This document shows, piece after piece, positions 6,486 through 64,000 of a stretch of 64,000 nt of DNA. The stretch is from the IMG/VR virus record IMGVR_UViG_3300036766_002289, positions 1 to 64,000 of that record. The stretch is one strand, 5' to 3'. The first letter of the stretch is position 1. Each line of letters opens with the position of its first letter. Below the pieces are notes generated by a model. The model saw nothing but the letters and a program-made list of their open reading frames with translations, was not told the DNA's origin and did no database searches. Both the position numbers and the translations under genes were made by a program.

Positions 6486-7268
6486 ATGAACCGTAGAGAA
6501 TTTTTAAAGACTTCTGCTGCAATAGCGGTTACTGCTGCCATACCTATGGATATTATGGCAACAGAAACAAAAAGTCCTTTTATTGACTTCGCAGAAAAGA
6601 ATTTCAAAATAAATCATTGGGAAAAAGGTCTTATTCCTTATGAAAGTACTAAACATCATAAAGAATTAGCCAAAATCTATGATGATGAAAGATTTGTATT
6701 AGTAAAGAAGTATAGACAAGGTGGTTTTACTACTATGTCTGTACTTTATGCATTACATCAATGTCTAACTAAGATTGATTTTAGGTGTGCGTTTATCTCA
6801 AAATATGACAGTATGTCTAGGGCTGTTAAGGAGCGTATCATTAATCCCACCTTAGATTTAATGAGTTATTTAAAGCCAGATATTAAAAGAAGTAACAGTC
6901 ATTTGTTAGAATTTGAGCATGGTAGCAGGATTGATTTTCGCTGTGCAAGTAACCTTTGTGGTTGTGGTGTGAGAACTGACTTGTTCATATTTGATGAAGC
7001 TGCGTTTATAGGAAAAATGGACGAATTATACGCAGCAATTTATCCATGTGCTTCGATGGGTGGCAAGATATTTTTGGTCTCGACCCCGAATAGGCCAAGA
7101 GAATTTTTCTATAAAACCTATGAAGCGGCAATGAAGGGTAAGAACAAATATAAAGTATACGCCCCGAGTTGCTTTGAACATCCAAACTATACGCCAGAGA
7201 AAATTGCGTTGCTAAAAGGATATCTTGGTGAGAAGGGTTGGAAACAAGAGTGTTTGGCTGAATTTTAA
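6486..7268 (+). CDS. terminase large subunit ATPase-like domain with twin-arginine-like N-terminus
   Basis: KYRQGGFTT (Walker A-like), LFIFDEAAF (Walker B), VSTPN, WKQECLAEF; no nuclease domain; begins MNRREFLKTSAAIA. Confidence 0.8.
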   Translation: MNRREFLKTSAAIAVTAAIPMDIMATETKSPFIDFAEKNFKINHWEKGLIPYESTKHHKELAKIYDDERFVLVKKYRQGGFTTMSVLYALHQCLTKIDFRCAFISKYDSMSRAVKERIINPTLDLMSYLKPDIKRSNSHLLEFEHGSRIDFRCASNLCGCGVRTDLFIFDEAAFIGKMDELYAAIYPCASMGGKIFLVSTPNRPREFFYKTYEAAMKGKNKYKVYAPSCFEHPNYTPEKIALLKGYLGEKGWKQECLAEF

Positions 7269-16735: not shown

Positions 16736-17302
16736 ATGAACAGAAGAACTTTTATCAAAACGGCAGCAATTAGTAGTGCGGCTTTAATGACTGGTAATTT
16801 AGCAATTGCTGCGACAGAGCCAATAAAATATGACTTTATTGAGCCAAAGTATTTGCTTCATATTTTGAAGAAACTGAGAGAATATCCTAGTAGATCGACG
16901 GATTATGATAGTCCAGTGTCGTCATCAATTTCTGAAATGTACAAAAATTATTGCTATATTACCCCAGAAATGATGAAGTTTGAAGAAAAGATTTATATTC
17001 CATTAATTGGAATTTCTAACATTCTCAGGCGTACAACACTTGGGGAGAATTCAACTGTAGATAAGACTTGGGTAGTTTTGAGTGAATCAGAAATTGATTT
17101 GTTTAATTTTACTGGTTCTAGTTTAAAACACCAAGAAACGGGGCATCCTTTAATGAAATATTGGGGTGCATGTTGTTGTGCGTGGCCACTTTATACATAT
17201 AAATATTGGCCCAAGGGATGGTTCTTATTAGGTCATGGGAAAGTTTTAAGGAAAAAAAGAAGTCAGTATGCTACGTTGCAAGTTAAGAGGAAAGAAAAAT
17301 GA
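16736..17302 (+). CDS. hypothetical protein with twin-arginine-like signal
   Basis: MNRRTFIKTAAISSAALMTGNLAIAA. Confidence 0.6.
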   Translation: MNRRTFIKTAAISSAALMTGNLAIAATEPIKYDFIEPKYLLHILKKLREYPSRSTDYDSPVSSSISEMYKNYCYITPEMMKFEEKIYIPLIGISNILRRTTLGENSTVDKTWVVLSESEIDLFNFTGSSLKHQETGHPLMKYWGACCCAWPLYTYKYWPKGWFLLGHGKVLRKKRSQYATLQVKRKEK

Positions 17303-38006: not shown

Positions 38007-38063
38007 CTGTAAATTTTCTTTTAATCTTATGGAAAGATTAAAAGAAAATGACTATATCATGGT

Positions 38064-38504
38064 ATGAAAACAAAAACATGTAATAATTGTCATTCAGAAA
38101 AACCATTATCAGAGTTTAATAGTAAAAAAAATAGTAAAGATGGACTTCAGCCGTGGTGTAGGGAATGTAATAAACAAAGATCACGACAGTATTATGCAGA
38201 TAACAGAGAATCCCATAAAAAAACTATTTTAAAAAGAAAGCATGAAAATTACAGGAAGATAAGAGATAGGATTTTAGAATTTAAAAAGAGTAATCCTTGT
38301 CTTGTTTGTGGGGAAAAAGAGCCGATTTGTTTAGATTTTCATCATGTGGAAAAGAAAAAAGTAAGAATTGCTGCGATTGCTTCAACGAATTGCAGTTTAG
38401 ATACGGTGGAAAAAGAAATTAAAAAGTGTGTAATTCTTTGCTCTAATTGTCATCGTAAATTACATGCTGGAATAATTGCCCTCGAAGCATTAATGGTGAT
38501 GTAG
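38064..38504 (+). CDS. HNH endonuclease (tRNA-associated family)
   Basis: CxxC, CLDFHH, EIKKCVILCSNCHRKLH; 3' end overlaps tRNA-Lys. Confidence 0.85.
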   Translation: MKTKTCNNCHSEKPLSEFNSKKNSKDGLQPWCRECNKQRSRQYYADNRESHKKTILKRKHENYRKIRDRILEFKKSNPCLVCGEKEPICLDFHHVEKKKVRIAAIASTNCSLDTVEKEIKKCVILCSNCHRKLHAGIIALEALMVM

Positions 38505-39420: not shown

Positions 39421-39493
39421 GCCTCGTTAGACTTCTGGGAAGTCACCACGCTTTCAACGTGGAACAAGATGGGATCGAAACCCATACGAGGTA
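39421..39493 (+). tRNA. tRNA-Glu(TTC)
   Basis: CCACG-CTTTCAA-CGTGG; T loop ATCGAAA. Confidence 0.8.
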
Positions 39494-39496
39494 CTT

Positions 39497-39964
39497 ATGA
39501 AAGTATGTTCTAGATGTGGTTTGGGAAAAAATATATTGTGTTTTTCCAAAAATGCTGGTAAAGTCGATGGACTTAACGTCTGGTGTAAAGAATGTTGTAA
39601 AGTTTACCGAGATGATTATTATATCCTACATAAAGATTATGAAATAGAGAGAAAAAATCTTCGCAAAGCAAGTAATAAAAAATGGTTCGAAGACTACCGA
39701 TCTAAACTTTGTTGTGAGATTTGTGAGGAAAGCCATCCTGCTACACTTGATTTTCATCACAAAAACGTAATAGAAAAAGATTTTAATGTGAGCATACTTG
39801 TCAGTGAAGGTTATGGAATTAAGAGGATTCTTGAAGAGATTGCTAAATGTAGGGTGTTATGTTCTAACTGTCATAGAAAACTTCATTGGGAAGAAAGGAG
39901 AGAGTATAATGACACATATGACTCCAGAGCAAGCGGCGGAATTTTGGAAACAAATGGACGCTGA
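39497..39964 (+). CDS. HNH endonuclease (tRNA-associated family)
   Basis: TLDFHH..EIAKCRVLCSNCHRKLH. Confidence 0.85.
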   Translation: MKVCSRCGLGKNILCFSKNAGKVDGLNVWCKECCKVYRDDYYILHKDYEIERKNLRKASNKKWFEDYRSKLCCEICEESHPATLDFHHKNVIEKDFNVSILVSEGYGIKRILEEIAKCRVLCSNCHRKLHWEERREYNDTYDSRASGGILETNGR

Positions 39965-41133: not shown

Positions 41134-41205
41134 GCCTCCGTGATCGTAATGGTAACGAATCAGACTCTTAATCTGAGAATCCGAGTTCAACTCTCGGCGG
41201 GGGTA
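41134..41205 (+). tRNA. tRNA-Lys(CTT)
   Basis: TCAGA-CTCTTAA-TCTGA. Confidence 0.85.
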
Positions 41206-41210
41206 CTAGT

Positions 41211-41753
41211 ATGCCCTTAACTATGAAAAAGTGTAATAAATGTGGTCTAGAAAAAACAGAATTTCATAAAAATACATCTTACTGTAAAGAGTGTAATATT
41301 GTTAGAGTTAAAGAGTGGGCAATACTTAATAAAGAAAAAATAACTAAAAACAGCGGTATCTATATAAAAGCTAAGCACTTTTTATTAAAGGCTATACTAG
41401 ATGATATTAAACATGAGAATGGGTGTAGTTTTTGTGGAGAGAATGATGCGTGCTGTTTAGATTTTCATCATATTGCTAATAAATCTGATAATGTTTCTAA
41501 ACTTCAACGAGATAAGAATGTTAAAAAGATTTGTGAAGAGTTGAATAAGTGTATCATAGTATGCGCAAACTGTCATCGAAAATTACACGATGGGAAAATA
41601 AATATTGGCGTTAGAAAGCTATTTGACATTAGTTTAGAAGAATTTATTACTAGAGTAAGTAACAGAGCAGCAGAATTTCTTCCCGATGAAAAACGGGTTA
41701 GAAAATGGTTAATTGCTCCTAAAGCTGTAGCGGCACAAGCACCTGTCTCTTAA
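41211..41753 (+). CDS. HNH endonuclease (tRNA-associated family)
   Basis: CLDFHH..ELNKCIIVCANCHRKLH; 3' end overlaps the next tRNA. Confidence 0.85.
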   Translation: MPLTMKKCNKCGLEKTEFHKNTSYCKECNIVRVKEWAILNKEKITKNSGIYIKAKHFLLKAILDDIKHENGCSFCGENDACCLDFHHIANKSDNVSKLQRDKNVKKICEELNKCIIVCANCHRKLHDGKINIGVRKLFDISLEEFITRVSNRAAEFLPDEKRVRKWLIAPKAVAAQAPVS

Positions 41754-42648: not shown

Positions 42649-42681
42649 CTGAAATAAGTTGAACCTTACTCTATATATGGT

Positions 42682-43293
42682 ATGCCATATAAAGATAAGG
42701 TTAAGCAGAAAGAATTTTCAAAACGTCATTATTTGTTGAATAAGGAAGTTTATCAACAATCCAGAAAACAAAATCGTAATAATCGCCATATTTGGTTCAA
42801 TGGAGTAAAATCACAACTAAAATGTTGTCAATGTGGAGAAAACGATTATCGCTGTTTAGATTTTCACCATAGGGAATTTGAGGAAAAAGTATTTGGAATT
42901 TCTGAAGGTGTAAAATCAGGTTATAGTGAAGAGAAAATTATAAAAGAAATTTCTAAATGTGATGTGTTATGTGCTAATTGTCATAGGAAAAAACATGCAA
43001 GCGTAAGATTGCCTGCTGACGGGTACCACAGGGAACGAGTTGGCAAAAACATAAAATGGCTAAGAGAATTTAAAAGAAAATTAAGTTGTGTTGATTGCGG
43101 CATAAAAGATGAATTTGTTCTAGATTTTCATCATCTTCGAGATAAAGATGATACTATTTGTAGATTAGCGGGAAATGGTTGTTCCGTCGAACGACTCTTA
43201 GAAGAAATTGCTAAATGCGAGGTTATATGTGCTAATTGCCATAGAAAGCGACATAATGGTAATGTATGGTCTGAAGATTCAGTGAAAAATTAG
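42682..43293 (+). CDS. tandem double-HNH endonuclease
   Basis: two LDFHH...EI.KC.V.CANCHRK.H domains. Confidence 0.85.
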   Translation: MPYKDKVKQKEFSKRHYLLNKEVYQQSRKQNRNNRHIWFNGVKSQLKCCQCGENDYRCLDFHHREFEEKVFGISEGVKSGYSEEKIIKEISKCDVLCANCHRKKHASVRLPADGYHRERVGKNIKWLREFKRKLSCVDCGIKDEFVLDFHHLRDKDDTICRLAGNGCSVERLLEEIAKCEVICANCHRKRHNGNVWSEDSVKN

Positions 43294-48691: not shown

Positions 48692-49558
48692 ATGAAATAC
48701 AATTTAGAACATATACAGAAACATTATGATGAAGGTTTGTCGTGGATTGAAGTTGCATCTAATTTAAAAATTAGTGAAGGCAGTTTAAGATATATGAGGA
48801 AAAAAGGATTCTTGAAAAGCAGGGATGCTAAAACAAAAATGAAATTTGCGGCTAAAAAGATATCTAGTGCTATGAAAGTGGCTCATGATGAAGGTAGGCA
48901 CCCTGGCTGGTTATCAGTAAACTTGAATAAGGAAAATAGAACCTACCCAGAACAGTTTTTTATTAATGCTATTGGTAATTTTAGATATTTAGATAACTAT
49001 ACCATATTGGAGAAAGTTGCTTTTCATCAATATGTTTTTGATTTTGTGATAGTAGAAGAAAAAATTGATATAGAGATAGACGGTGAACACCACCTTCATG
49101 ATTTTAATACAGTTGAAAAAGATGTAAAAAGAGACAAGAAAGCAATTGCTAATGGATGGAAGGTTTTTAGGATATCATGGGATGAATTGCGTTTGAATAC
49201 TTCTAAGGTTATGGATGAATTAATTAACTTCATAAAATTAAATAAAAGTGATAATGAATCTGTGATTCAAGTTATTACGCTTGAACCTACAGATAATCCA
49301 AGAAGTTTCCGTGCGGCTAAATTTAAGATTAGTTGTCATCCACCTAAGCCAAAAAGACAAGTTGGGGAATATAGGCCAAAATTTAAATTAAGAAAAGTGG
49401 TGAGACCACCAAAAGAAGAGTTAGAAAAATTAGTTTGGCAAATTCCATCATTGCATCTGTCTAGTAAGTTCGGAGTTAGTGATAGAACAATTGGAAAGTG
49501 GTGTAAATGGTATGATATTACTAAGCCACCTAGAGGTTATTGGATGAAGAACGCTTGA
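48692..49558 (+). CDS. DUF559/Vsr-like endonuclease with HTH domains
   Basis: YVFDF..IEIDGEHH..RD....GWKVFRISW; C-terminal FGVSD.TIGKWC..PPRGYW. Confidence 0.8.
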   Translation: MKYNLEHIQKHYDEGLSWIEVASNLKISEGSLRYMRKKGFLKSRDAKTKMKFAAKKISSAMKVAHDEGRHPGWLSVNLNKENRTYPEQFFINAIGNFRYLDNYTILEKVAFHQYVFDFVIVEEKIDIEIDGEHHLHDFNTVEKDVKRDKKAIANGWKVFRISWDELRLNTSKVMDELINFIKLNKSDNESVIQVITLEPTDNPRSFRAAKFKISCHPPKPKRQVGEYRPKFKLRKVVRPPKEELEKLVWQIPSLHLSSKFGVSDRTIGKWCKWYDITKPPRGYWMKNA

Positions 49559-49578
49559 ATACATACAAGAAGAGGTTT

Positions 49579-50016
49579 ATGAAAAATTATTGGTTAGATA
49601 AGAAAAAGGGCGGATTTCCACAAGACGATGAATTTTCGAAAGTGGCGGGTTGTTGTGGTGATTTTGCTTGTAATTGCTCTGCTAATTTAGATATATTTTA
49701 TGGGTCTCAGTTTGTTCAAAATGAAGAGATTTATGGCCGAGCGATAGAACGAAACGAAAGTAAGGCTATTTGGAAAACTGAATTTACTCCTATATTAAGA
49801 GGCACAATGTTCGGTAAGGTCTATATGAATGGTGCCGAAATTTATGATTTTAGTTTTTGTTTTTCGGGCAGTGTTGTTTTGAAACAAGTTAATGATAGTG
49901 AGATGAAGATTTTGCGTATAAATTTAAAGGAAGCAACTGGAGAAATTGAAACTTGGTGGGATAAGTTGCCTATATTAGACACCATAATTAAGGTAAATTA
50001 CGAATTTATTAGATGA
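49579..50016 (+). CDS. hypothetical protein, MKNYWL family
   Basis: NLDIFY.S.F.QNE, TPILRGTM, terminal VNYEF. Confidence 0.6.
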   Translation: MKNYWLDKKKGGFPQDDEFSKVAGCCGDFACNCSANLDIFYGSQFVQNEEIYGRAIERNESKAIWKTEFTPILRGTMFGKVYMNGAEIYDFSFCFSGSVVLKQVNDSEMKILRINLKEATGEIETWWDKLPILDTIIKVNYEFIR

Positions 50017-50027
50017 ATTAGGAGACT

Positions 50028-50639
50028 ATGAAAAATTATTGGTTGGATAAAAGGTCTGATTTGCCAGGGTGGAAAGATGGTAAAATAGTTGACATGGATT
50101 TGTGGAAGGGCAAATGCTCTAAGTGTGGTGAGTATGAGTGGCCGTTTAACGATGAAAATATCATGATGCAAGGCGACCCTATGTGTGCATGTTACAGTGG
50201 TTATTGCAATTTAGATATTTTTTATCCTAGTAGGTTTATCCAGAATGAAACATTGGATGTTCGGAGTGATAATGGTTATATAACCACTTATCAGGTAATG
50301 CATACGCCTATTTTACCTGGAACAATGAGCGGTTATATTTGCTTAGAAGAACAATGTCCGCCACTTAATGGTTGGAGTTTCACAGTAAATTCGGAAGGTA
50401 AGTTTGAAGTGAAGCGATATGGTGAATGGGCGAAGAATTCTTTATCTGGCGATGACGACGTATTGACTTTGCAAAAATTAGCAGAAAGTGATGAACCACT
50501 AATTAGTTATTATGATGAAATTCATTATTGGGAAACAAAGTTAAATTGTGTGACAGGTATATTAGAACTTCATCATCATACTGTTGGACCTACACCAAAA
50601 ATAGTTGCATCCTACGAATATGATAAGTGTGAGGTTTAG
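50028..50639 (+). CDS. hypothetical protein, MKNYWL family paralog
   Basis: NLDIFYPSRFIQNE, TPILPGTM, terminal SYEY. Confidence 0.6.
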   Translation: MKNYWLDKRSDLPGWKDGKIVDMDLWKGKCSKCGEYEWPFNDENIMMQGDPMCACYSGYCNLDIFYPSRFIQNETLDVRSDNGYITTYQVMHTPILPGTMSGYICLEEQCPPLNGWSFTVNSEGKFEVKRYGEWAKNSLSGDDDVLTLQKLAESDEPLISYYDEIHYWETKLNCVTGILELHHHTVGPTPKIVASYEYDKCEV

Positions 50640-53510: not shown

Positions 53511-53556
53511 CTTTACAACGTCTTGGTTTCGTGCTATACTAATCATGGAGGAACCA

Positions 53557-54651
53557 ATGAAACTACCTACGCTTTATTCACGTCGTTCTGATGGCAAAGT
53601 CCAAATCTGGGAAAAAGAAATTGTAGACAATAAATACCGTACACATTCAGGCATTAAAGACGGTGAAATCGTCACTGCTGAGTGGACAGTGTGTGTAGAA
53701 AAGAACTTAGGCAAGACAAATTACATTGACGCCAAACATCAGGCAGTCACGGAAGCCAAGGCCGAATGGCAGAAGAAAAAAGATAAAGGTTATAAGGAAG
53801 ATATCAAGGATATTGATAATTCCACTTTTTTTGAGCCGATGCTTGCCAAGGTTTGGCAGGATTATAAGGATGAGGCAATTTATCCTGCCTATGTCCAGCC
53901 TAAGTTAGACGGAATGCGTCTTATTGCAAATAAAGAAGGTCTGTGGACAAGGAACGGCAAAGAGTATAAGTCTATTCCGCACATCTATGAAGCTCTGAAG
54001 CCTTTATTTAAATTCAACCCTAAATACATTTTTGACGGGGAGGTTTACGCGGATAAATTCGCGCACGATTTCAACAAAATCTGTTCGCTGGCTAAAAAGA
54101 CTAAACCAACGGATGAAGACATTGCAGAGTCTGAGAAAAGTATTGAATATCATGTTTACGATTTCCCGTATTGGGATGATGTATTCAGTGCCCGTCATGC
54201 TGAGTTGCTTAAAGTCGCTAAGCATTTCAAGAACAAGAAATTAAAGATTGTTGAGACGCATGAAGTTGCGTCTAGTAAAGAAATTGATACTCACTATGAG
54301 AAGTTTGTTCAGGACGGTTATGAGGGTTTAATGGTTCGCATGGATGCAAAGTATGAGAATAAGCGAACTAAGGTTCTGCTTAAGTATAAGGAATTTAAGG
54401 ATGATGAGTATGAAATTTTGGATGTAGTGGAAGGTGTAGGCAATAAGAGTGGTGGTGCAGGGGCACTTGTTTGTAAGAACAAGGACAACAGCACGTTCCA
54501 TTCTAACATTAAGGGCAATCGTGAGTTCTGTAAGGCCATGTTAATCAATAAGAATGATTACATTGGCAAGATGGCGACTATTCAATTCTTTAATTTGACG
54601 GTGGATGGTGTGCCTCGATTCCCTTATTTCTTGAGGGTTCGTGATGAATAG
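53557..54651 (+). CDS. ATP-dependent DNA ligase
   Basis: FEPMLA, QPKLDGMR (motif I), FDGEVY, YHVYD, GYEGLMVR, LLKYK, GVPRFP. Confidence 0.95.
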   Translation: MKLPTLYSRRSDGKVQIWEKEIVDNKYRTHSGIKDGEIVTAEWTVCVEKNLGKTNYIDAKHQAVTEAKAEWQKKKDKGYKEDIKDIDNSTFFEPMLAKVWQDYKDEAIYPAYVQPKLDGMRLIANKEGLWTRNGKEYKSIPHIYEALKPLFKFNPKYIFDGEVYADKFAHDFNKICSLAKKTKPTDEDIAESEKSIEYHVYDFPYWDDVFSARHAELLKVAKHFKNKKLKIVETHEVASSKEIDTHYEKFVQDGYEGLMVRMDAKYENKRTKVLLKYKEFKDDEYEILDVVEGVGNKSGGAGALVCKNKDNSTFHSNIKGNREFCKAMLINKNDYIGKMATIQFFNLTVDGVPRFPYFLRVRDE

Positions 54652-55131: not shown

Positions 55132-55791
55132 ATGGACTGGCTTAAATTTGAAATCTTTGTCCGAGTCCTAATTTTTTATAGTATATTCAGCTTTTATGCC
55201 GAAGTTGATTTTGCTCAAGAAAACACAAGTAGCGGTTTTTGGTTATGGAGTGAGCGAATAGTCGCAATTCTATTTACTATTGAATATTTCTTAAGATGGA
55301 GTTGGTCAAAACATGGTTGGAAGTGGCCATTCACTTTTTATGCTGTTGTAGATTTACTTGCAATTCTTCCTTTCTATGTTGGCCTTTTTGTTCAGCCACA
55401 TCATCTTGGCGTTATTAGGTCTTTTCGTGTATTAAGGCTTTTAAAGCTTACACGTTACAGCATTGCCTTGGATAGGTTCTTGGAGAGTTTTAGAAGAATC
55501 AAGGACGAGTTGGCGATTATTGTAGTTTTCTTAATGATTGTTGTGTTTTTGGGGGCTACTTTATTATACGAATTTGAGCATCCTGCTCAACCTGATAAGA
55601 TAACTTGTTTATCTGATGCTACTTGGCTTTGTTTTATTACCATCTCGACTATTGGCTACGGGGACATATTCCCAATAACATGGCCAGGAAGAATTGTTGT
55701 AATGGTCGTTTGTGTATTAGGGTTAGGTGTTTTTGGGTCATTTGTAAGTTTGCTGGGGAGTTCCCTAACTAACAAAGACTTGACAAAGTGA
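55132..55791 (+). CDS. voltage-gated-type potassium channel
   Basis: S4 RSFRVLRLLKL; selectivity filter TIGYGD; DLLAILPFY. Confidence 0.9.
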   Translation: MDWLKFEIFVRVLIFYSIFSFYAEVDFAQENTSSGFWLWSERIVAILFTIEYFLRWSWSKHGWKWPFTFYAVVDLLAILPFYVGLFVQPHHLGVIRSFRVLRLLKLTRYSIALDRFLESFRRIKDELAIIVVFLMIVVFLGATLLYEFEHPAQPDKITCLSDATWLCFITISTIGYGDIFPITWPGRIVVMVVCVLGLGVFGSFVSLLGSSLTNKDLTK

Positions 55792-59442: not shown

Positions 59443-59628
59443 GTTGGAACTATAGAATAATGAAGCATGTGGACGATGGCGAAACATGGTATGGAATACA
59501 CGAAGTCATCTATGACGAAGGAAAACTTAGTTATACAGAGACTGCATTTGCAATTGGGGATAGCCCCGAAGAATTGAAGTCTGTGTGCGAGATGATGTGT
59601 GAAGCTTTCAAAAAACCTATTTTGGAGT

Positions 59629-60519
59629 ATGAAAATGAGCGAGAATCTACTTAAAGCTTGTGGTCTGATCCTTGGTGTTGGTTTAGTTTGTGGCGTACTT
59701 TCGTTCTTTGTCTGGTTTCTCAATAGCTCCAATCCAGACGTGCCTGCTGGATATGTTGGCTATCAGACTCAAGGAGCAGTTTTTGGTCAAGGCAAGTTTT
59801 ATGGAACATTAAAAGGCCCAGCTTCCCCAGGTCGAACATGGATGGTTAAGAGTTTCCCTGTTAGTATTACTCCTTACACTTACGCAGAAGAATTCTCTGG
59901 AGAGAGTGAAGTTCTTTCCAAGGACAATCTGAAGATTAATTACAGAATTCATATAGTATGGCGTATCAAGGAAGATAGTGTTAAGGATGCTGTGGAAAAA
60001 TTCTCTACTATTGATACAACTGGTAAGATACAAGACCCAGAAAAAGTCGTAAAAGACATTTATGGCAATTACCTTAAAGAACCACTTAGAACTTTTAGTC
60101 GAGATGAAGTGCAAAAGTTGAATTGGGTCGAAATCAAAGAAAAACAGGTCATTATAGGGGATAACATCAAGAATAATATGCTTAAGTTAACAAAGGACAC
60201 ACCATTCGATATCATTAGTGTGGTTGTCGGCAATATCCAATATCCTAAAGTAGTATCTGATGCAGTAGCAGATAATCTTGCTACAACACAGCATTTAGAG
60301 AAGGAAAGAAAAGATGCCGAACGAAGGGTTGTGCAGGCGGAAGGTATTGCTAAGTCTATGGAAATTATCAACCAAAGACTGACTTCACAATACTTGCAGC
60401 ACGAGGCTATTGAAGCACAGAAGTCTATGGTTAATAGTCCTAATCATACGGTTATCTACATTCCTGTAGGTAATATGGGTATTCCTTTGGTGGGGACTAT
60501 TGATGCGGGTAAAAAATGA
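59629..60519 (+). CDS. SPFH/Band 7 membrane protein
   Basis: N-terminal TM, VPAGYVG, LSKDNL, A.GIAK..IN..LT..YLQ. Confidence 0.85.
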   Translation: MKMSENLLKACGLILGVGLVCGVLSFFVWFLNSSNPDVPAGYVGYQTQGAVFGQGKFYGTLKGPASPGRTWMVKSFPVSITPYTYAEEFSGESEVLSKDNLKINYRIHIVWRIKEDSVKDAVEKFSTIDTTGKIQDPEKVVKDIYGNYLKEPLRTFSRDEVQKLNWVEIKEKQVIIGDNIKNNMLKLTKDTPFDIISVVVGNIQYPKVVSDAVADNLATTQHLEKERKDAERRVVQAEGIAKSMEIINQRLTSQYLQHEAIEAQKSMVNSPNHTVIYIPVGNMGIPLVGTIDAGKK

Positions 60520-62737: not shown

Positions 62738-63220
62738 ATGGATATAATTCAACTGGAAAACCTTGTAAATCAAGGATTAAGTCAATATAAAATTGCAGAT
62801 ATTTTTGGTTGCTCGCAAAGTAAGATAAAATATTGGTGCATTAAACTTGGTATAAAGGCAAAACAAAAAATTAGGAAATGTGCTTTGTGCGGGGAAACGG
62901 ATGCCATTAAAATTTATAGGCATAAAGATGGTAGGTTTAGGTATCGTTGCAAGAAGTGTGATAATAAAAAAACTATTGAGCGGTTTAGGGATTACAAAAA
63001 GAAGGCCGTAGAATATAAAGGTAGTAAGTGTTTGATTTGCGGTTATTCTAAGTGTTTAGCGTCTTTAGAATTTCATCATAGGAGTCCAGATGAAAAAGAC
63101 CCGCGTTGGACTAAAATGCGAAATTGGCCCCTTTATAAAATAAAAACTGAATTGGATAAATGTGATTTAGTCTGTAGTAATTGTCATAGGGAGATTCATT
63201 ATGGAAGAGGTGAAATATGA
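62738..63220 (+). CDS. HTH + HNH endonuclease (same family as the tRNA-associated HNHs)
   Basis: LEFHH..EKD..ELDKCDLVCSNCHREIH. Confidence 0.85.
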   Translation: MDIIQLENLVNQGLSQYKIADIFGCSQSKIKYWCIKLGIKAKQKIRKCALCGETDAIKIYRHKDGRFRYRCKKCDNKKTIERFRDYKKKAVEYKGSKCLICGYSKCLASLEFHHRSPDEKDPRWTKMRNWPLYKIKTELDKCDLVCSNCHREIHYGRGEI

Positions 63221-63494
63221 ATTTTTTTGAAGTTTGTTTTAACAGCATGTCTGGCTTAAGAATCTTGATTGTAAAGAGCGTTATGCCTTGTCTCAGTTAA
63301 TGATTTGTAGGACAATTACTGGAGAACAAGTTCGTGAAAAACATCCCGAAGTAGATTTTACTAGAATACACAATGTAACTCCTTTTTTAAGTCTTATCCC
63401 ACCACCAGTGGATTTATGGTCGTTTAATGAAGATTGGTATGATGTTTTGGTCAAGGTTATGCTTTTAGAAGGTATTCGTTAATTGGAGATAATC

Positions 63495-64000
63495 ATGAAT
63501 AAAGAACGTAGGGGCTTTATGGCTTGGCTAGCTGGGTTTTTTGGTCTTGGCGCGGTTACGCAATTAGGTGCGCAACCAGTAAGTATGACCAACAATCATC
63601 CAGTATATGGGAAACAAGGTGAATGGATTCTTTACAAACAAGATGTGCCAAATAAAAAAGGCATTATTGTCTTTACAATGAATGTTGGTAATCTTCCCCC
63701 CTTAAAAGCAGAAGCCTACATTGAAAGGATCAAAGATCAGTTCCGTAAAAGTGGCAACCCACAAGATTGGCAAGACTGGCAGCATATTTTTATGCCAGTC
63801 CGCCATCAAGAAACTAAGGTTGAGATTTTTTCATTTGAAAAGTGTGATTACATAGAGCCTATGAAAGTTCTGGGGGCTGTCGTTCCTTTTGTAGCCCCAA
63901 GTAAAGAATCTGTAAAGGATTATGTCCTTTTGATGTTAGGTGCGCCAGTTGTTAAGGTTGAATTAGATGATACTCAACTTGAATTTGCATATAACAGTAC
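63495..64000 (+). CDS. chimeric protein (partial): Tat-like N-terminus + portal-like segment + neck gp13-like segment
   Basis: not in the ORF track (runs off the window); MNKERRGF.., VFTMNVGNLPPLKAEAYIE, VKDYVLLMLGAPVVKVELDDTQ. Confidence 0.6.
   Translation, partial: MNKERRGFMAWLAGFFGLGAVTQLGAQPVSMTNNHPVYGKQGEWILYKQDVPNKKGIIVFTMNVGNLPPLKAEAYIERIKDQFRKSGNPQDWQDWQHIFMPVRHQETKVEIFSFEKCDYIEPMKVLGAVVPFVAPSKESVKDYVLLMLGAPVVKVELDDTQLEFAYNS

What the first reader, a model, noticed from the sequence alone, without database searches (positions are those of the whole stretch)
63495..64000. Tat-like signal fused to portal-clip-like and neck-like fragments
An ORF missed by the track reads MNKERRGFMAWLAGFFGLGAV, then VFTMNVGNLPPLKAEAYIERIKDQFRK (recalls the T4 gp20 portal motif FYIDVGNLP..KAEQY), then VKDYVLLMLGAPVVKVELDDTQ (recalls the T4 gp13 neck N-terminus). 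Fragments of two head-assembly proteins in one small accessory gene are unusual. Established: portal and terminase are sensed by Avs STAND ATPases. Inference: immune decoy or dominant-negative inhibitor of competing phages.
Basis: partly seen in the sequence, partly recalled or inferred. Interest (0 to 1): 0.68.

Follow-up and report, generated by a model that had tools for sequence, protein, structure and literature searches.

The report
Signal-tagged portal-clip plus neck chimera
A 590-kb sediment phage makes a small extra protein that joins a secretion-type (twin-arginine) leader to a copy of its portal's docking tip and the core of its neck adaptor. It is one of a set of leader-tagged pieces of the DNA-packaging machinery, and their purpose (possibly an immune decoy) is unknown.

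Summary
The ORF (window 63495 to past the window end; 255 aa, P0001) is a conserved, non-collinear mosaic of the phage's own genes. It has an RR-hydrophobic-AxA leader and a 19-aa scrap of the gp13 swing domain. Next comes a copy of the portal clip (hhalign 98.5%, E 3.9e-15 vs the phage's own portal). Last is the gp13 four-helix bundle (Z 13.6 vs T4 gp13), which lacks the swing domain, fibritin domain and portal-binding C-terminal arm.

It is not the neck protein. An intact portal lies at 372-375 kb. A canonical 300-aa gp13 lies next to a gp15-like gene on the same 590-kb contig, in 200 kb that the 'provirus' call trimmed off.

The leader+clip module defines an undescribed family of at least 25 clusters: alone, doubled, or fused to the gp13 bundle. 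The same phage also has a Tat-signal+terminase-ATPase paralog (a family of 10 clusters) and an RR+portal-crown paralog.

Terminase, portal and portal adaptor are exactly the proteins sensed by Avs/STAND receptors. The fusion paralog evolves much faster than its parent genes (39% vs 74-80% identity).

Best guess, as inference: a trigger/partner-mimicking decoy routed to the Tat translocon or membrane. The function is untested.

The parts
63485..63488 (+). Shine-Dalgarno-like GGAG, 6 nt upstream of the ATG
   Evidence: Read directly from the sequence.
63495..64000 (+). The ORF (P0001), open at the window's 3' end. The full gene is G000 63495-64262, 255 aa plus stop.
   Evidence: The same gene is called by JGI on contig Ga0373622_0000005.
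63495..63572 (+). aa 1-26: twin-arginine-type leader. MNKERR is the n-region, GFMAWLAGFFGLGAV the Gly/Ala-rich h-region, and TQLGA|QP a small-x-small site.
   Evidence: RR at positions 3-6 in 26 of 27 family members (sequences). No Pfam or TIGR Tat HMM hit for this protein.
63585..63641 (+). aa 31-49: a relocated scrap of the gp13 swing domain (MTNNHPVYGKQGEWILYKQ). Present only in the P0001-P0003 subgroup.
   Evidence: BLASTP against the phage's own canonical gp13 P0375 residues 162-180: 12/19 identities, E 3e-6, out of order relative to the rest. Alignment A1.
63660..63833 (+). aa 56-113: copy of the portal clip domain (strand, helix alpha6 equivalent, two strands). It keeps the clip-tip motif VG-N-L-P-P-L-K-AEA and the invariant R103.
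   Evidence: hhalign A2/A6 against own portal residues 501-574. BLASTP. Mapping to the T4 gp20 clip, residues 279-358, through. The AF2 model gives E-H-E-E with pLDDT 80-95.
63891..64000 (+). aa 133-168, continuing to aa 255 beyond the window: the gp13 four-helix bundle. It includes the KDYVLLMLGAPVVKVELDD alpha1 motif and, past the window end, a 14-residue loop in the gp14-adaptor-loop position. It ends where T4 gp13's portal-binding C-terminal arm would begin.
   Evidence: VIA-align against 9lu6_A/9lu7_A/9lu4_A: Z 12.9-13.6, model 133-255 on gp13 residues 5-300. BLASTP against own gp13. Domain boundaries from PMC12929587.
6486..7268 (+). Companion gene RR1 (P0249, 260 aa): a Tat signal (MNRREFLKTSAAIAV...IMA|TE) followed by a paralog of the large-terminase ATPase domain with its Walker A-like, Walker B and coupling motifs conserved.
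   Evidence: TIGR01409 18.3 bits, above its 16.7 cutoff. Pfam TAT_signal 21.7 bits and Terminase_6N 24.3 bits, above its 22 cutoff. phrog_2 E 1e-21. 33% identity, E 2e-34, to own TerL residues 85-314. Family alignment A5.
16736..17302 (+). Companion gene RR2 (188 aa): a Tat-like leader (MNRRTFIKTAAISSAALMTGNLAIA|A) followed by a domain of unknown origin.
   Evidence: Pfam TAT_signal 18.2 bits. TIGR01409 15.8 bits, just under its cutoff. No PHROG, Pfam or Atlas assignment.

Best explanation
SHOWN. P0001 is an accessory paralog, not a virion neck protein. It is built from pieces of the phage's own genes. A twin-arginine-type leader comes first, then a copy of the portal clip. In T4 the clip is the surface on which both the packaging ATPase and the neck adaptor dock. 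The last part is the four-helix-bundle core of the gp13 adaptor. That core has lost every element gp13 uses to hold the real portal and capsid: the swing domain, the fibritin domain and the C-terminal arm. P0001 is one of a set of leader-tagged fragments of portal-vertex proteins in this phage. The others are a terminase ATPase domain and a portal crown. The leader+clip module is a conserved, fast-diverging family in huge T4-like phages.

INFERRED. The protein works as a detached mimic of the portal-adaptor junction. The leader takes the folded protein to the host Tat receptor or inner membrane. There the clip copy and the adaptor bundle offer the same conserved surfaces as unassembled portal and adaptor, while RR1 offers the terminase ATPase surface. 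They would occupy proteins that recognise those surfaces. The most likely targets are host STAND/Avs-type sensors, which are known to detect terminase, portal and portal adaptor. The sensors would be held in a membrane-tethered, non-productive state while the real proteins assemble.
For: Anatomy: clip homology; gp13 bundle present; swing domain, fibritin domain and C-arm absent; RR conserved in 26/27.

Accessory status: portal elsewhere. Canonical gp13 P0375 lies next to a T4-gp15-like gene on the same contig. The relative LR756511.1 likewise has both a canonical gp13 and the fusion paralog.

Selection rather than recent copying: third-codon-position identity to the portal is only 9/32, while 19/32 residues match. 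The invariant family residues (G65, K71, E73, R103) fall on the clip tip and the inner strand. In T4 that region holds the gp17-, gp13- and DNA-contact residues N291, M292, R295, K296 and R338/R339.

A set, not a one-off: RR1 passes the curated Tat model and keeps its ATPase motifs across 10 clusters. RR4 is 58% identical to the portal crown. A stand-alone 86-aa leader+clip-stub occurs in LR756511.1. Family variants include clip alone, two clips, and clip+gp13.

Arms-race signature: the fusion paralog is 39% identical between two phages whose portal and gp13 are 74% and 80% identical, and the set's membership differs between them. The gene sits among small co-directional accessory genes, not in the structural module.

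Relevance of the targets: Avs1-3 sense the terminase, and Avs2 binds its ATPase domain. Avs4 and Avs11 sense the portal. Avs12 senses the portal adaptor. Recognition is of unassembled forms (PMC13581612; bioRxiv 10.64898/2026.08.25.746987).
Against: No experiment or computation here shows binding to any sensor, terminase or neck protein. The one complex prediction gave no verdict.

By the positive-inside rule, and given the AxA-like sites, a Tat-type leader predicts export of the domain to the periplasm. Cytoplasmic sensors and assembly partners are absent there.

Truncated targets were used to measure Avs activation, so a fragment could trigger a sensor rather than block it.

The leader of P0001's own family fails both Tat HMMs. 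Structure searches with the isolated clip-like domain did not retrieve portals. Expression timing is unknown (no RNA runs).
Confidence: 0.33

Rival explanations
1. Packaging or neck interference. The fragments titrate the phage-type partners of the clip and adaptor (terminase, gp14-like stopper, gp13 arms). This would either exclude co-infecting related phages in a dominant-negative way or hold back the phage's own packaging and neck attachment until the right time.
For: The clip copy keeps the region that in T4 contacts gp17 and gp13. A loop in the gp14-adaptor-loop position is kept and resembles the canonical paralog's. RR1 keeps a complete ATPase domain up to the conserved QECLAEF end, a span that should include the portal-binding subdomain. 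That last point is inference from T4 numbering. Fast divergence fits inter-phage conflict.
Against: The phage would poison its own assembly unless specificity or timing protects it. P0001 lacks the arm and swing domain needed to sit on a real portal. The leader is unexplained by this model. The complex prediction of P0001 with RR1 gave no verdict.
Confidence: 0.2
2. Envelope function after genuine Tat export. The folded fragments act in the periplasm, for example by binding DNA or ejected proteins of superinfecting phages. That would be superinfection exclusion, or a lysis-inhibition-type sensor like T4 RI (the T4 comparison is from my own knowledge).
For: RR, an uncharged h-region and small-x-small sites are conserved, several with a basic residue in the c-region. 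RR1 passes TIGR01409. All four parent elements line the DNA conduit.
Against: The natural partners of clip, adaptor and terminase are cytoplasmic. The near-invariant ATPase motifs of RR1 are hard to explain where there is no ATP. Three RR1-family members lack the leader.
Confidence: 0.12
3. Membrane tether or initiator for head assembly. This would be analogous to the T4 gp40/membrane-bound portal initiation step (from my own knowledge). A leader-anchored ring of clip+adaptor core would nucleate or hold the portal vertex at the inner membrane.
For: An N-terminal hydrophobic anchor joined to portal-vertex modules. The family is conserved in huge T4-like phages.
Against: The predicted N-in/C-out topology puts the domain on the wrong side of the membrane. 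The portal-binding arm and swing domain are missing. It evolves far faster than assembly genes and the set's content varies between close relatives.
Confidence: 0.08
4. It is the phage's genuine neck adaptor (a gp13 orthologue with an odd N-terminal extension).
For: It is the only phrog_211 match inside the 390-kb record. The gp13 bundle fold is clear.
Against: A canonical 300-aa gp13 with a strong PF26809 hit lies next to a gp15-like gene on the same contig. The relative has both genes. The swing domain, fibritin domain and portal-binding arm are absent. It carries a signal-type leader.
Confidence: 0.03
5. Non-functional mosaic debris from illegitimate recombination, or a chance resemblance.
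For: The segment order is non-collinear. The genome holds other fragment paralogs, for example of the major capsid protein.
Against: The ORF is intact with an RBS. The family has at least 25 clusters at 50% identity with conserved motifs. Third positions are saturated while residues are conserved. The profile statistics are significant.
Confidence: 0.03

Closest known systems
T4 gp13 neck protein / portal adaptor (Pfam PF26809 Phage_T4_gp13; PHROG 211 'head-tail adaptor Ad2'; PDB 9lu4, 9lu6, 9lu7, 9mkb)
   Same: The four-helix bundle (T4 residues 3-51 and 239-300) superposes with Z 13.6, rmsd 2.3 A and 26% identity. The alpha1 motif LGAPV.K.ELD is 66% identical to the phage's own gp13. A 14-residue loop sits where the gp14-binding adaptor loop lies.
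   Different: It has no swing domain, no fibritin-binding domain and no portal-binding C-terminal arm. It carries a leader and a portal-clip copy at the N-terminus. It is a second, fast-evolving copy outside the structural module.
T4-type portal protein gp20, clip domain (Pfam PF07230; PDB 3ja7, 6uzc)
   Same: aa 56-113 are homologous to the clip (T4 residues 279-358): one strand, helix alpha6 and two strands. The clip-tip motif and a conserved Arg in the inner strand are kept.
   Different: Only about 58 of the portal's more than 500 residues are present. The loop between alpha6 and the next strand is 16 residues shorter. There is no wing, stem or crown, so it cannot be a portal subunit. Fold searches did not retrieve portals.
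Twin-arginine (Tat) signal peptides (TIGR01409, PF10518)
   Same: RR in a short n-region, a moderately hydrophobic Gly/Ala-rich h-region, and small-x-small c-region sites, often with a Lys. The companion RR1 passes the curated TIGR01409 cutoff.
   Different: P0001's family reads RR-x-F-[MIF]-[AGS] rather than RR-x-F-L-K and fails both HMMs. The cargoes are cytoplasmic assembly proteins, which are not known Tat substrates. The phage encodes no TatA or TatC.
Phage triggers of Avs/STAND receptors (terminase: Avs1-3; portal: Avs4, Avs11; portal adaptor: Avs12)
   Same: The leader-tagged fragments derive from exactly these three proteins. For the terminase it is the ATPase domain, which Avs2 binds.
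   Different: No fragment-type inhibitor of Avs is described in the papers I could search. Whether these fragments bind, block or trigger any sensor is untested.

Membership tests
T4 gp13 neck/portal adaptor (PF26809, phrog_211) | Four-helix bundle, domain I (T4 residues 3-51 and 239-300) | tested here: met
   VIA-align Z 13.6, rmsd 2.3 A, 103 aligned residues, model 133-255 on gp13 5-300. The next unrelated row is at Z 7.5. phrog_211 E 6e-7.
T4 gp13 neck/portal adaptor (PF26809, phrog_211) | Swing domain (52-192) and fibritin-binding domain (190-239) | tested here: not met
   The region between alpha2 and alpha5 is about 15 residues in P0001, against about 190 in T4 and about 145 in the own gp13. 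Only a 19-aa scrap survives, moved to aa 31-49.
T4 gp13 neck/portal adaptor (PF26809, phrog_211) | Portal-binding C-terminal arm (301-308) | tested here: not met
   P0001's last residue aligns to gp13 residue 300. The own canonical gp13 continues about 12-15 residues further (WGDGPTLGITMD). All close family members end at the same point.
T4 gp13 neck/portal adaptor (PF26809, phrog_211) | gp14-binding adaptor loop (266-279) | tested here: inconclusive
   A 14-residue loop between the last two helices (YISLPGSGGNIVMD) resembles the own gp13's (WTNIPGPNGGVQLD), but it varies across the family. Binding was not tested.
T4 gp13 neck/portal adaptor (PF26809, phrog_211) | Sole adaptor gene, located in the neck/structural module | tested here: not met
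   The canonical gp13 P0375 lies beside a T4-gp15-like gene at about 35 kb of the same contig. P0001 lies among small accessory genes.
T4-type portal (PF07230) | Full wing-stem-clip-crown protein passing the family threshold | tested here: not met
   14.4 bits against a cutoff of 22.9, and only profile positions 208-235 match. The real portal scores 258 bits.
T4-type portal (PF07230) | Homology of aa 56-113 to the clip domain | tested here: met
   hhalign 98.5% probability, E 3.9e-15, 58 columns. hmmsearch E 2.4e-10. BLASTP E 8e-9.
T4-type portal (PF07230) | Structural superposition of the domain on a solved portal clip | tested here: inconclusive
   The isolated-domain model (pLDDT 79.6) has the strand-helix-strand-strand order described for the clip. 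Foldseek and VIA-wide returned only generic thioredoxin-like hits, Z at most 4.3.
Tat (twin-arginine) signal peptide | Consecutive arginines in the n-region, an uncharged h-region and an AxA-type c-region | tested here: met
   RR at residues 5-6, 33 uncharged residues after it, and LGA|QP. RR at positions 3-6 in 26 of 27 family members.
Tat (twin-arginine) signal peptide | Curated HMM score (TIGR01409 cutoff 16.7; PF10518 cutoff 22.7) | tested here: not met
   No hit for P0001, P0007, P0110 or P0114, nor for any of the 27 members with Pfam. Met for the companion RR1 (18.3 bits). RR2 (15.8) and the 86-aa relative (14.5) fall just below.
Tat (twin-arginine) signal peptide | Tat-dependent export and leader cleavage | not testable with these tools
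   Needs fractionation in tat+ and tat- hosts and N-terminal mapping.
Anti-defence decoy of Avs/STAND sensors (hypothetical class) | Binds a sensor's recognition domain and prevents its activation | not tested
   Circumstantial only: the fragments coincide with known triggers and the gene diverges fast.

The most novel reading that the evidence does not exclude
Huge T4-like phages carry a previously undescribed class of proteins. These are twin-arginine-leader-tagged, domain-sized copies of the very proteins that bacterial STAND/Avs receptors recognise: the terminase ATPase domain, the portal clip and crown, and the portal-adaptor bundle. They would act as trigger mimics that capture the sensors at the Tat translocon or membrane, or remove them by hitch-hiking export. 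That would be a new anti-defence principle, and a new use of the Tat pathway by a virus.
Probability: 0.25. Interest if true: 0.9.

Novelty: new variant of a known kind. Interest (0 to 1): 0.72.

Why it matters
Every part is a known domain, but I found the architecture in no family library or paper. It joins a secretion-type leader, the portal's docking tip and an adaptor core stripped of its portal-binding parts. The same phage has leader-tagged terminase-ATPase and portal-crown fragments as well.

Cytoplasmic assembly proteins carrying Tat-type leaders are unexpected. The parent proteins are the ones now known to be the main triggers of bacterial STAND immunity. The family therefore gives a concrete, testable candidate for a trigger-mimic counter-defence. 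If that is wrong, it points to a new kind of inter-phage interference or a membrane-linked assembly step in 0.6-Mb phages.

It also matters for annotation. These proteins are tagged 'gp13' or 'portal' by weak hits and could be mistaken for structural genes. In addition, the IMG/VR 'provirus' trimming removed 200 kb of genuine phage genome, including the real neck genes.

Tried and rejected
- Complex prediction of P0001 (aa 52-255) with RR1 (aa 28-260): 'no answer', score 0.00. This counts neither for nor against binding.
- Foldseek (pdb) and VIA-wide with the isolated clip-like domain: only generic thioredoxin-like beta-alpha-beta-beta hits (E at least 0.03; Z at most 4.3) and no portal.
- phmmer of P0001, and a profile of its N-domain, against PDB sequences: only spurious BamE and HNH rows. 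phmmer of the canonical gp13 against PDB: nothing.
- Pfam TAT_signal over 27 family members, and TIGR01409 on P0001, P0007, P0110 and P0114: no hits.
- TatC and TatA/B/E families in the phage record: none, so there is no phage-encoded Tat machinery in the 390 kb held.
- T4 late-promoter motif TATAAATA: 16 and 21 copies on the two strands, against about 30 expected per strand, and none upstream of the portal, TerL, MCP or RR genes. This gives no timing inference.
- Recent gene conversion from the portal: rejected. Nucleotide identity is 58% and third-position identity is 9/32.
- RR2's mature domain: no PHROG, Pfam or NCBIfam hit, and the Atlas score of 0.84 is below the reliable range.
- LR756511.1 searched for RR1-, RR2- and RR4-type paralogs: only its full-length terminase and portal matched.
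The canonical gp13 was found instead through cluster membership.
- Literature searches for Tat or twin-arginine with terminase, portal or huge phages found nothing on this architecture. The Science 2022 Avs paper is not held.
Full report
**1. The observation.**
The window is bases 1-64000 of a 390,039-bp IMG/VR record. An ORF begins at ATG 63495, six bases after a GGAG, and runs off the window end. In the genome it ends at 64262, giving 255 aa (P0001). JGI's gene caller calls the same 255-aa gene.

**2. The real genome and the real structural genes.**
P0001 lies at about 263.5 kb of JGI contig Ga0373622_0000005, which is 590,099 bp long. The record held is therefore contig positions ~200,021-590,059. 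The 'provirus' call cut off the first 200 kb.

Inside the record:
- A T4-type portal lies at 372396-374927 (PF07230 E 1.4e-77).
- A 614-aa large terminase lies at about 368.2-370.1 kb, and a gp23-like 478-aa capsid protein at 380.9-382.3 kb. Both assignments are by reading and by paralog matches.
- P0001 is the only phrog_211 (gp13-type adaptor) match in the record.

That alone would suggest P0001 is the neck protein, but other evidence contradicts it:
- The 595-kb relative LR756511.1 has both a canonical 300-aa gp13 and a P0001 homologue.
- Cluster membership shows a canonical 300-aa gp13 (P0375) on the same 590,099-bp contig.
- P0375 lies at about 35 kb, in the trimmed part, beside a T4-gp15-like gene.

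P0001 is therefore an extra paralog. The finding's refutation condition ('it is the genuine neck protein') fails.

**3. Anatomy of P0001.**

(a) *aa 1-26, the leader.* The sequence is MNKERR-GFMAWLAGFFGLGAV-TQLGA|QP.

(b) *aa 31-49, a swing-domain scrap.* It matches own-gp13 residues 162-180 (12/19 identities, E 3e-6), out of order relative to the rest. Only the closest relatives have it.

(c) *aa 56-113, the clip copy.*
- BLASTP against the own portal gives 19/32 identities, E 8e-9.
- Family profiles align 56-58 columns to portal residues 501-574, with 97.7% then 98.5% probability and E 2e-12 then 4e-15.
- The alignment covers the strand and helix (VF..NVG.LPP.KAEAFIER.K) and, after a 16-residue shorter loop, the strand W..IP.R...T.IE.
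[quoted passage not shown] Its tip residues N291, M292, R295 and K296 contact gp17 (PMC4493910).
- The family's invariant or near-invariant residues (V64, G65, L67, K71, A72, E73, P101, R103) fall on that tip and on the inner strand.
- AF2 gives strand-helix-strand-strand with pLDDT 80-95.
- Fold searches with the isolated domain did not retrieve portals, so structural confirmation is lacking.

(d) *aa 133-255, the gp13 bundle.*
- It superposes on T4 gp13 chains of 9lu6, 9lu7 and 9lu4 with Z 12.9-13.6, spanning gp13 residues 5-300.
- The published gp13 parts are: bundle 3-51 and 239-300, swing 52-192, fibritin domain 190-239, gp14 adaptor loop 266-279, and portal-binding C-terminal arm 301-308 (PMC12929587).
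- P0001 keeps the bundle and a 14-residue loop in the adaptor-loop position. It lacks the swing domain, the fibritin domain and the arm.
- Against its own canonical paralog it matches 53-81 (66% identity) and 227-285 (36%), and it stops about 12-15 residues early.
- In T4 the arm and the swing domain are what fasten gp13 to the portal and capsid. P0001 has lost those fasteners and instead carries a clip of its own.

**4. It is a family.**
- The word search found eight full-length relatives of 236-263 aa. About 90 ordinary ~300-aa gp13 proteins shared only the alpha1 motif.
- The exhaustive profile search with the N-terminal module gave 310 proteins at E no greater than 1e-3. Many of these are probably truncated portal genes. 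About 20 clusters (at 50% identity) match from the first residue.
- Their sequences all begin M-x-(N/D)-RR-x-F, followed by a hydrophobic stretch and a small-x-small site, and then the clip copy.
- After that they diverge: nothing further (P0106, P0144, P0246), a second clip (P0107, P0111), a Cys-rich tail (P0108), or the gp13 bundle (most).
- LR756511.1 also has a stand-alone 86-aa protein with SRRNFLK plus a hydrophobic stretch, the clip strand and the helix.
- The conserved unit is therefore leader+clip, and the gp13 bundle is a frequent addition.

**5. Is the leader a Tat signal?**
For:
- RR sits at positions 3-6 in 26 of 27 members, despite 30-50% overall identity.
- The following stretch is uncharged and Gly/Ala-rich.
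- ANA|E-, AKA|E-, VKA|E- and ATA-type sites follow, several with a c-region Lys.

Against:
- Neither PF10518 nor TIGR01409 scores any member of this family.

I call it Tat-like by motif. Actual export is untested.

**6. The wider pattern in this phage.**
A motif scan of all six-frame ORFs found four RR-type N-termini, all within the first 70 kb of the record.
- *RR1* (window 6486-7265) passes TIGR01409 (18.3 bits against a 16.7 cutoff). It is a paralog of the terminase ATPase domain: 33% identity and E 2e-34 to the own TerL, phrog_2 E 1e-21, and Terminase_6N above its cutoff.
- The RR1 family has 10 clusters. Seven carry MNRREFLKTS...MA|E. KKYRQGGF[ST]T, DE.AF and VST are nearly invariant.
- *RR4* (G000 69954-70286) is 58% identical to the portal crown (E 1e-24).
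- *RR2* (window 16736-17299) has a near-threshold Tat signal and an unassigned domain.
- LR756511.1 lacks RR1-, RR2- and RR4-type paralogs, so the set varies between relatives.
- The phage encodes no TatA or TatC in the 390 kb held.

**7. Evolution.**
- The clip copy is an old duplicate kept by selection. Nucleotide identity to the portal is 58% and third positions match at 9/32, yet 19/32 residues are identical.
- Between this phage and LR756511.1 the portal is 74% identical and the canonical gp13 80%, but P0001 and P0008 are only 39% identical.
- Fast divergence, variable gene content and a position among small co-directional accessory genes are what one expects of conflict genes rather than assembly genes.

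**8. Function (inference).**
The parent elements all meet at the portal vertex. In T4 the clip binds the terminase ATPase and the adaptor, and the adaptor bundle binds gp14. The same three proteins are dedicated triggers of Avs/STAND receptors, which recognise unassembled forms: terminase for Avs1-3 (Avs2 binds the ATPase domain), portal for Avs4 and Avs11, and portal adaptor for Avs12 (PMC13581612; bioRxiv 10.64898/2026.08.25.746987).

I therefore rank a trigger/partner-mimic ('decoy') routed to the Tat receptor or membrane as most likely, at about one in three.

The main objections are:
- Export would place the domains in the periplasm.
- Fragments may trigger sensors rather than block them.
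- Nothing here shows binding.

The rivals are interference with the packaging or neck assembly of competitors or of the phage itself, a true periplasmic role, and a membrane tether for assembly. I consider the readings 'genuine neck protein' and 'debris' essentially excluded.

**9. Context.**
The phage is from sediment and freshwater metagenomes. No RNA data were on hand.

Noticed in passing
window 6486-7268 (+): RR1: a 260-aa protein with a Tat signal that passes TIGR01409, followed by a paralog of the large-terminase ATPase domain with its catalytic motifs intact. It is a conserved family of 10 clusters, one of them on a 543-kb contig.
   Followed up: yes
window 16736-17302 (+): RR2: a 188-aa protein with a near-threshold Tat signal (MNRRTFIKTAAISSAAL...AIA|A) and a Cys-rich domain that no family library or Atlas search explains. 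It may be another fragment whose parent gene lies in the trimmed 200 kb.
   Followed up: partly
L013:5954-6286 (= G000 69954-70286, +), just beyond the window: RR4: a 111-aa protein with an RR-hydrophobic leader (MDRRTWFASLFGGVAAILG) followed by a copy of the portal crown. It is 58% identical to portal residues 682-753.
   Followed up: partly
L002:490-3018 (G000 ~372396-374927); also L007:1096-3669 (-) in LR756511.1: The portal gene carries an intein-like insert of about 230 aa (FADEA|CVIGNTLIS ... SSLVMHN|CQKDENG) in both phages, and a long Pro/Gly-rich C-terminal tail.
   Followed up: no
whole record G000, compared with JGI contig Ga0373622_0000005 (L016, L018): The IMG/VR 'provirus' record is a 590,099-bp huge-phage contig with its first ~200 kb trimmed off. 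The trimmed part holds genuine phage neck genes (canonical gp13 and a gp15-like gene), so the provirus boundary looks like a mis-call.
   Followed up: partly
window 49534-50013 and 50022-50636 (+); G000 155152-155700 (-): Three small ORFs are fragment paralogs of the 478-aa gp23-like capsid protein. They match its residues ~107-237 or 305-415 at E 1e-9 to 1e-10 and have no RR leader. Two of them are adjacent and begin MKNYWLDK.
   Followed up: no
L008:1495-1755 (-) in LR756511.1: A stand-alone 86-aa protein with SRRNFLK, a hydrophobic stretch and AKA|LE, followed by only the first strand and helix of the clip. It lies next to a 178-aa ORF.
   Followed up: partly
window 62738-63220 (+), immediately upstream of the finding; also 38052-38501, 39431-39961, 41172-41750, 42658-43290 and G000 258110, 295111, 302028: A multi-copy family (at least 8 paralogs) of 150-210-aa Cys/His-rich proteins (CxxC...HH), probably HNH-type endonucleases, is scattered through the genome. 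One sits directly before the chimeric gene, which could be relevant to how such mosaics arise.
   Followed up: no
G000 83525-109344 (+): Two giant paralogous ORFs (2502 and 1431 aa, 45% identical over ~1100 aa) are followed by an array of five or six ~350-aa paralogs at 47-54% identity.
   Followed up: no
window ~55132-55791 (+) (L016:1638-2297): A phage-encoded ion-channel-type protein (Ion_trans / Ion_trans_2). Nearby are a DNA ligase (window ~53545-54651) and an SPFH/Band_7 protein (59599-60519).
   Followed up: no
L009:3176-5788 (contig carrying family member P0024): An 870-aa gene with major-vault-protein shoulder and Vault_3 Pfam hits lies 4 kb upstream of the P0024 homologue on a 78-kb contig.
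   Followed up: no
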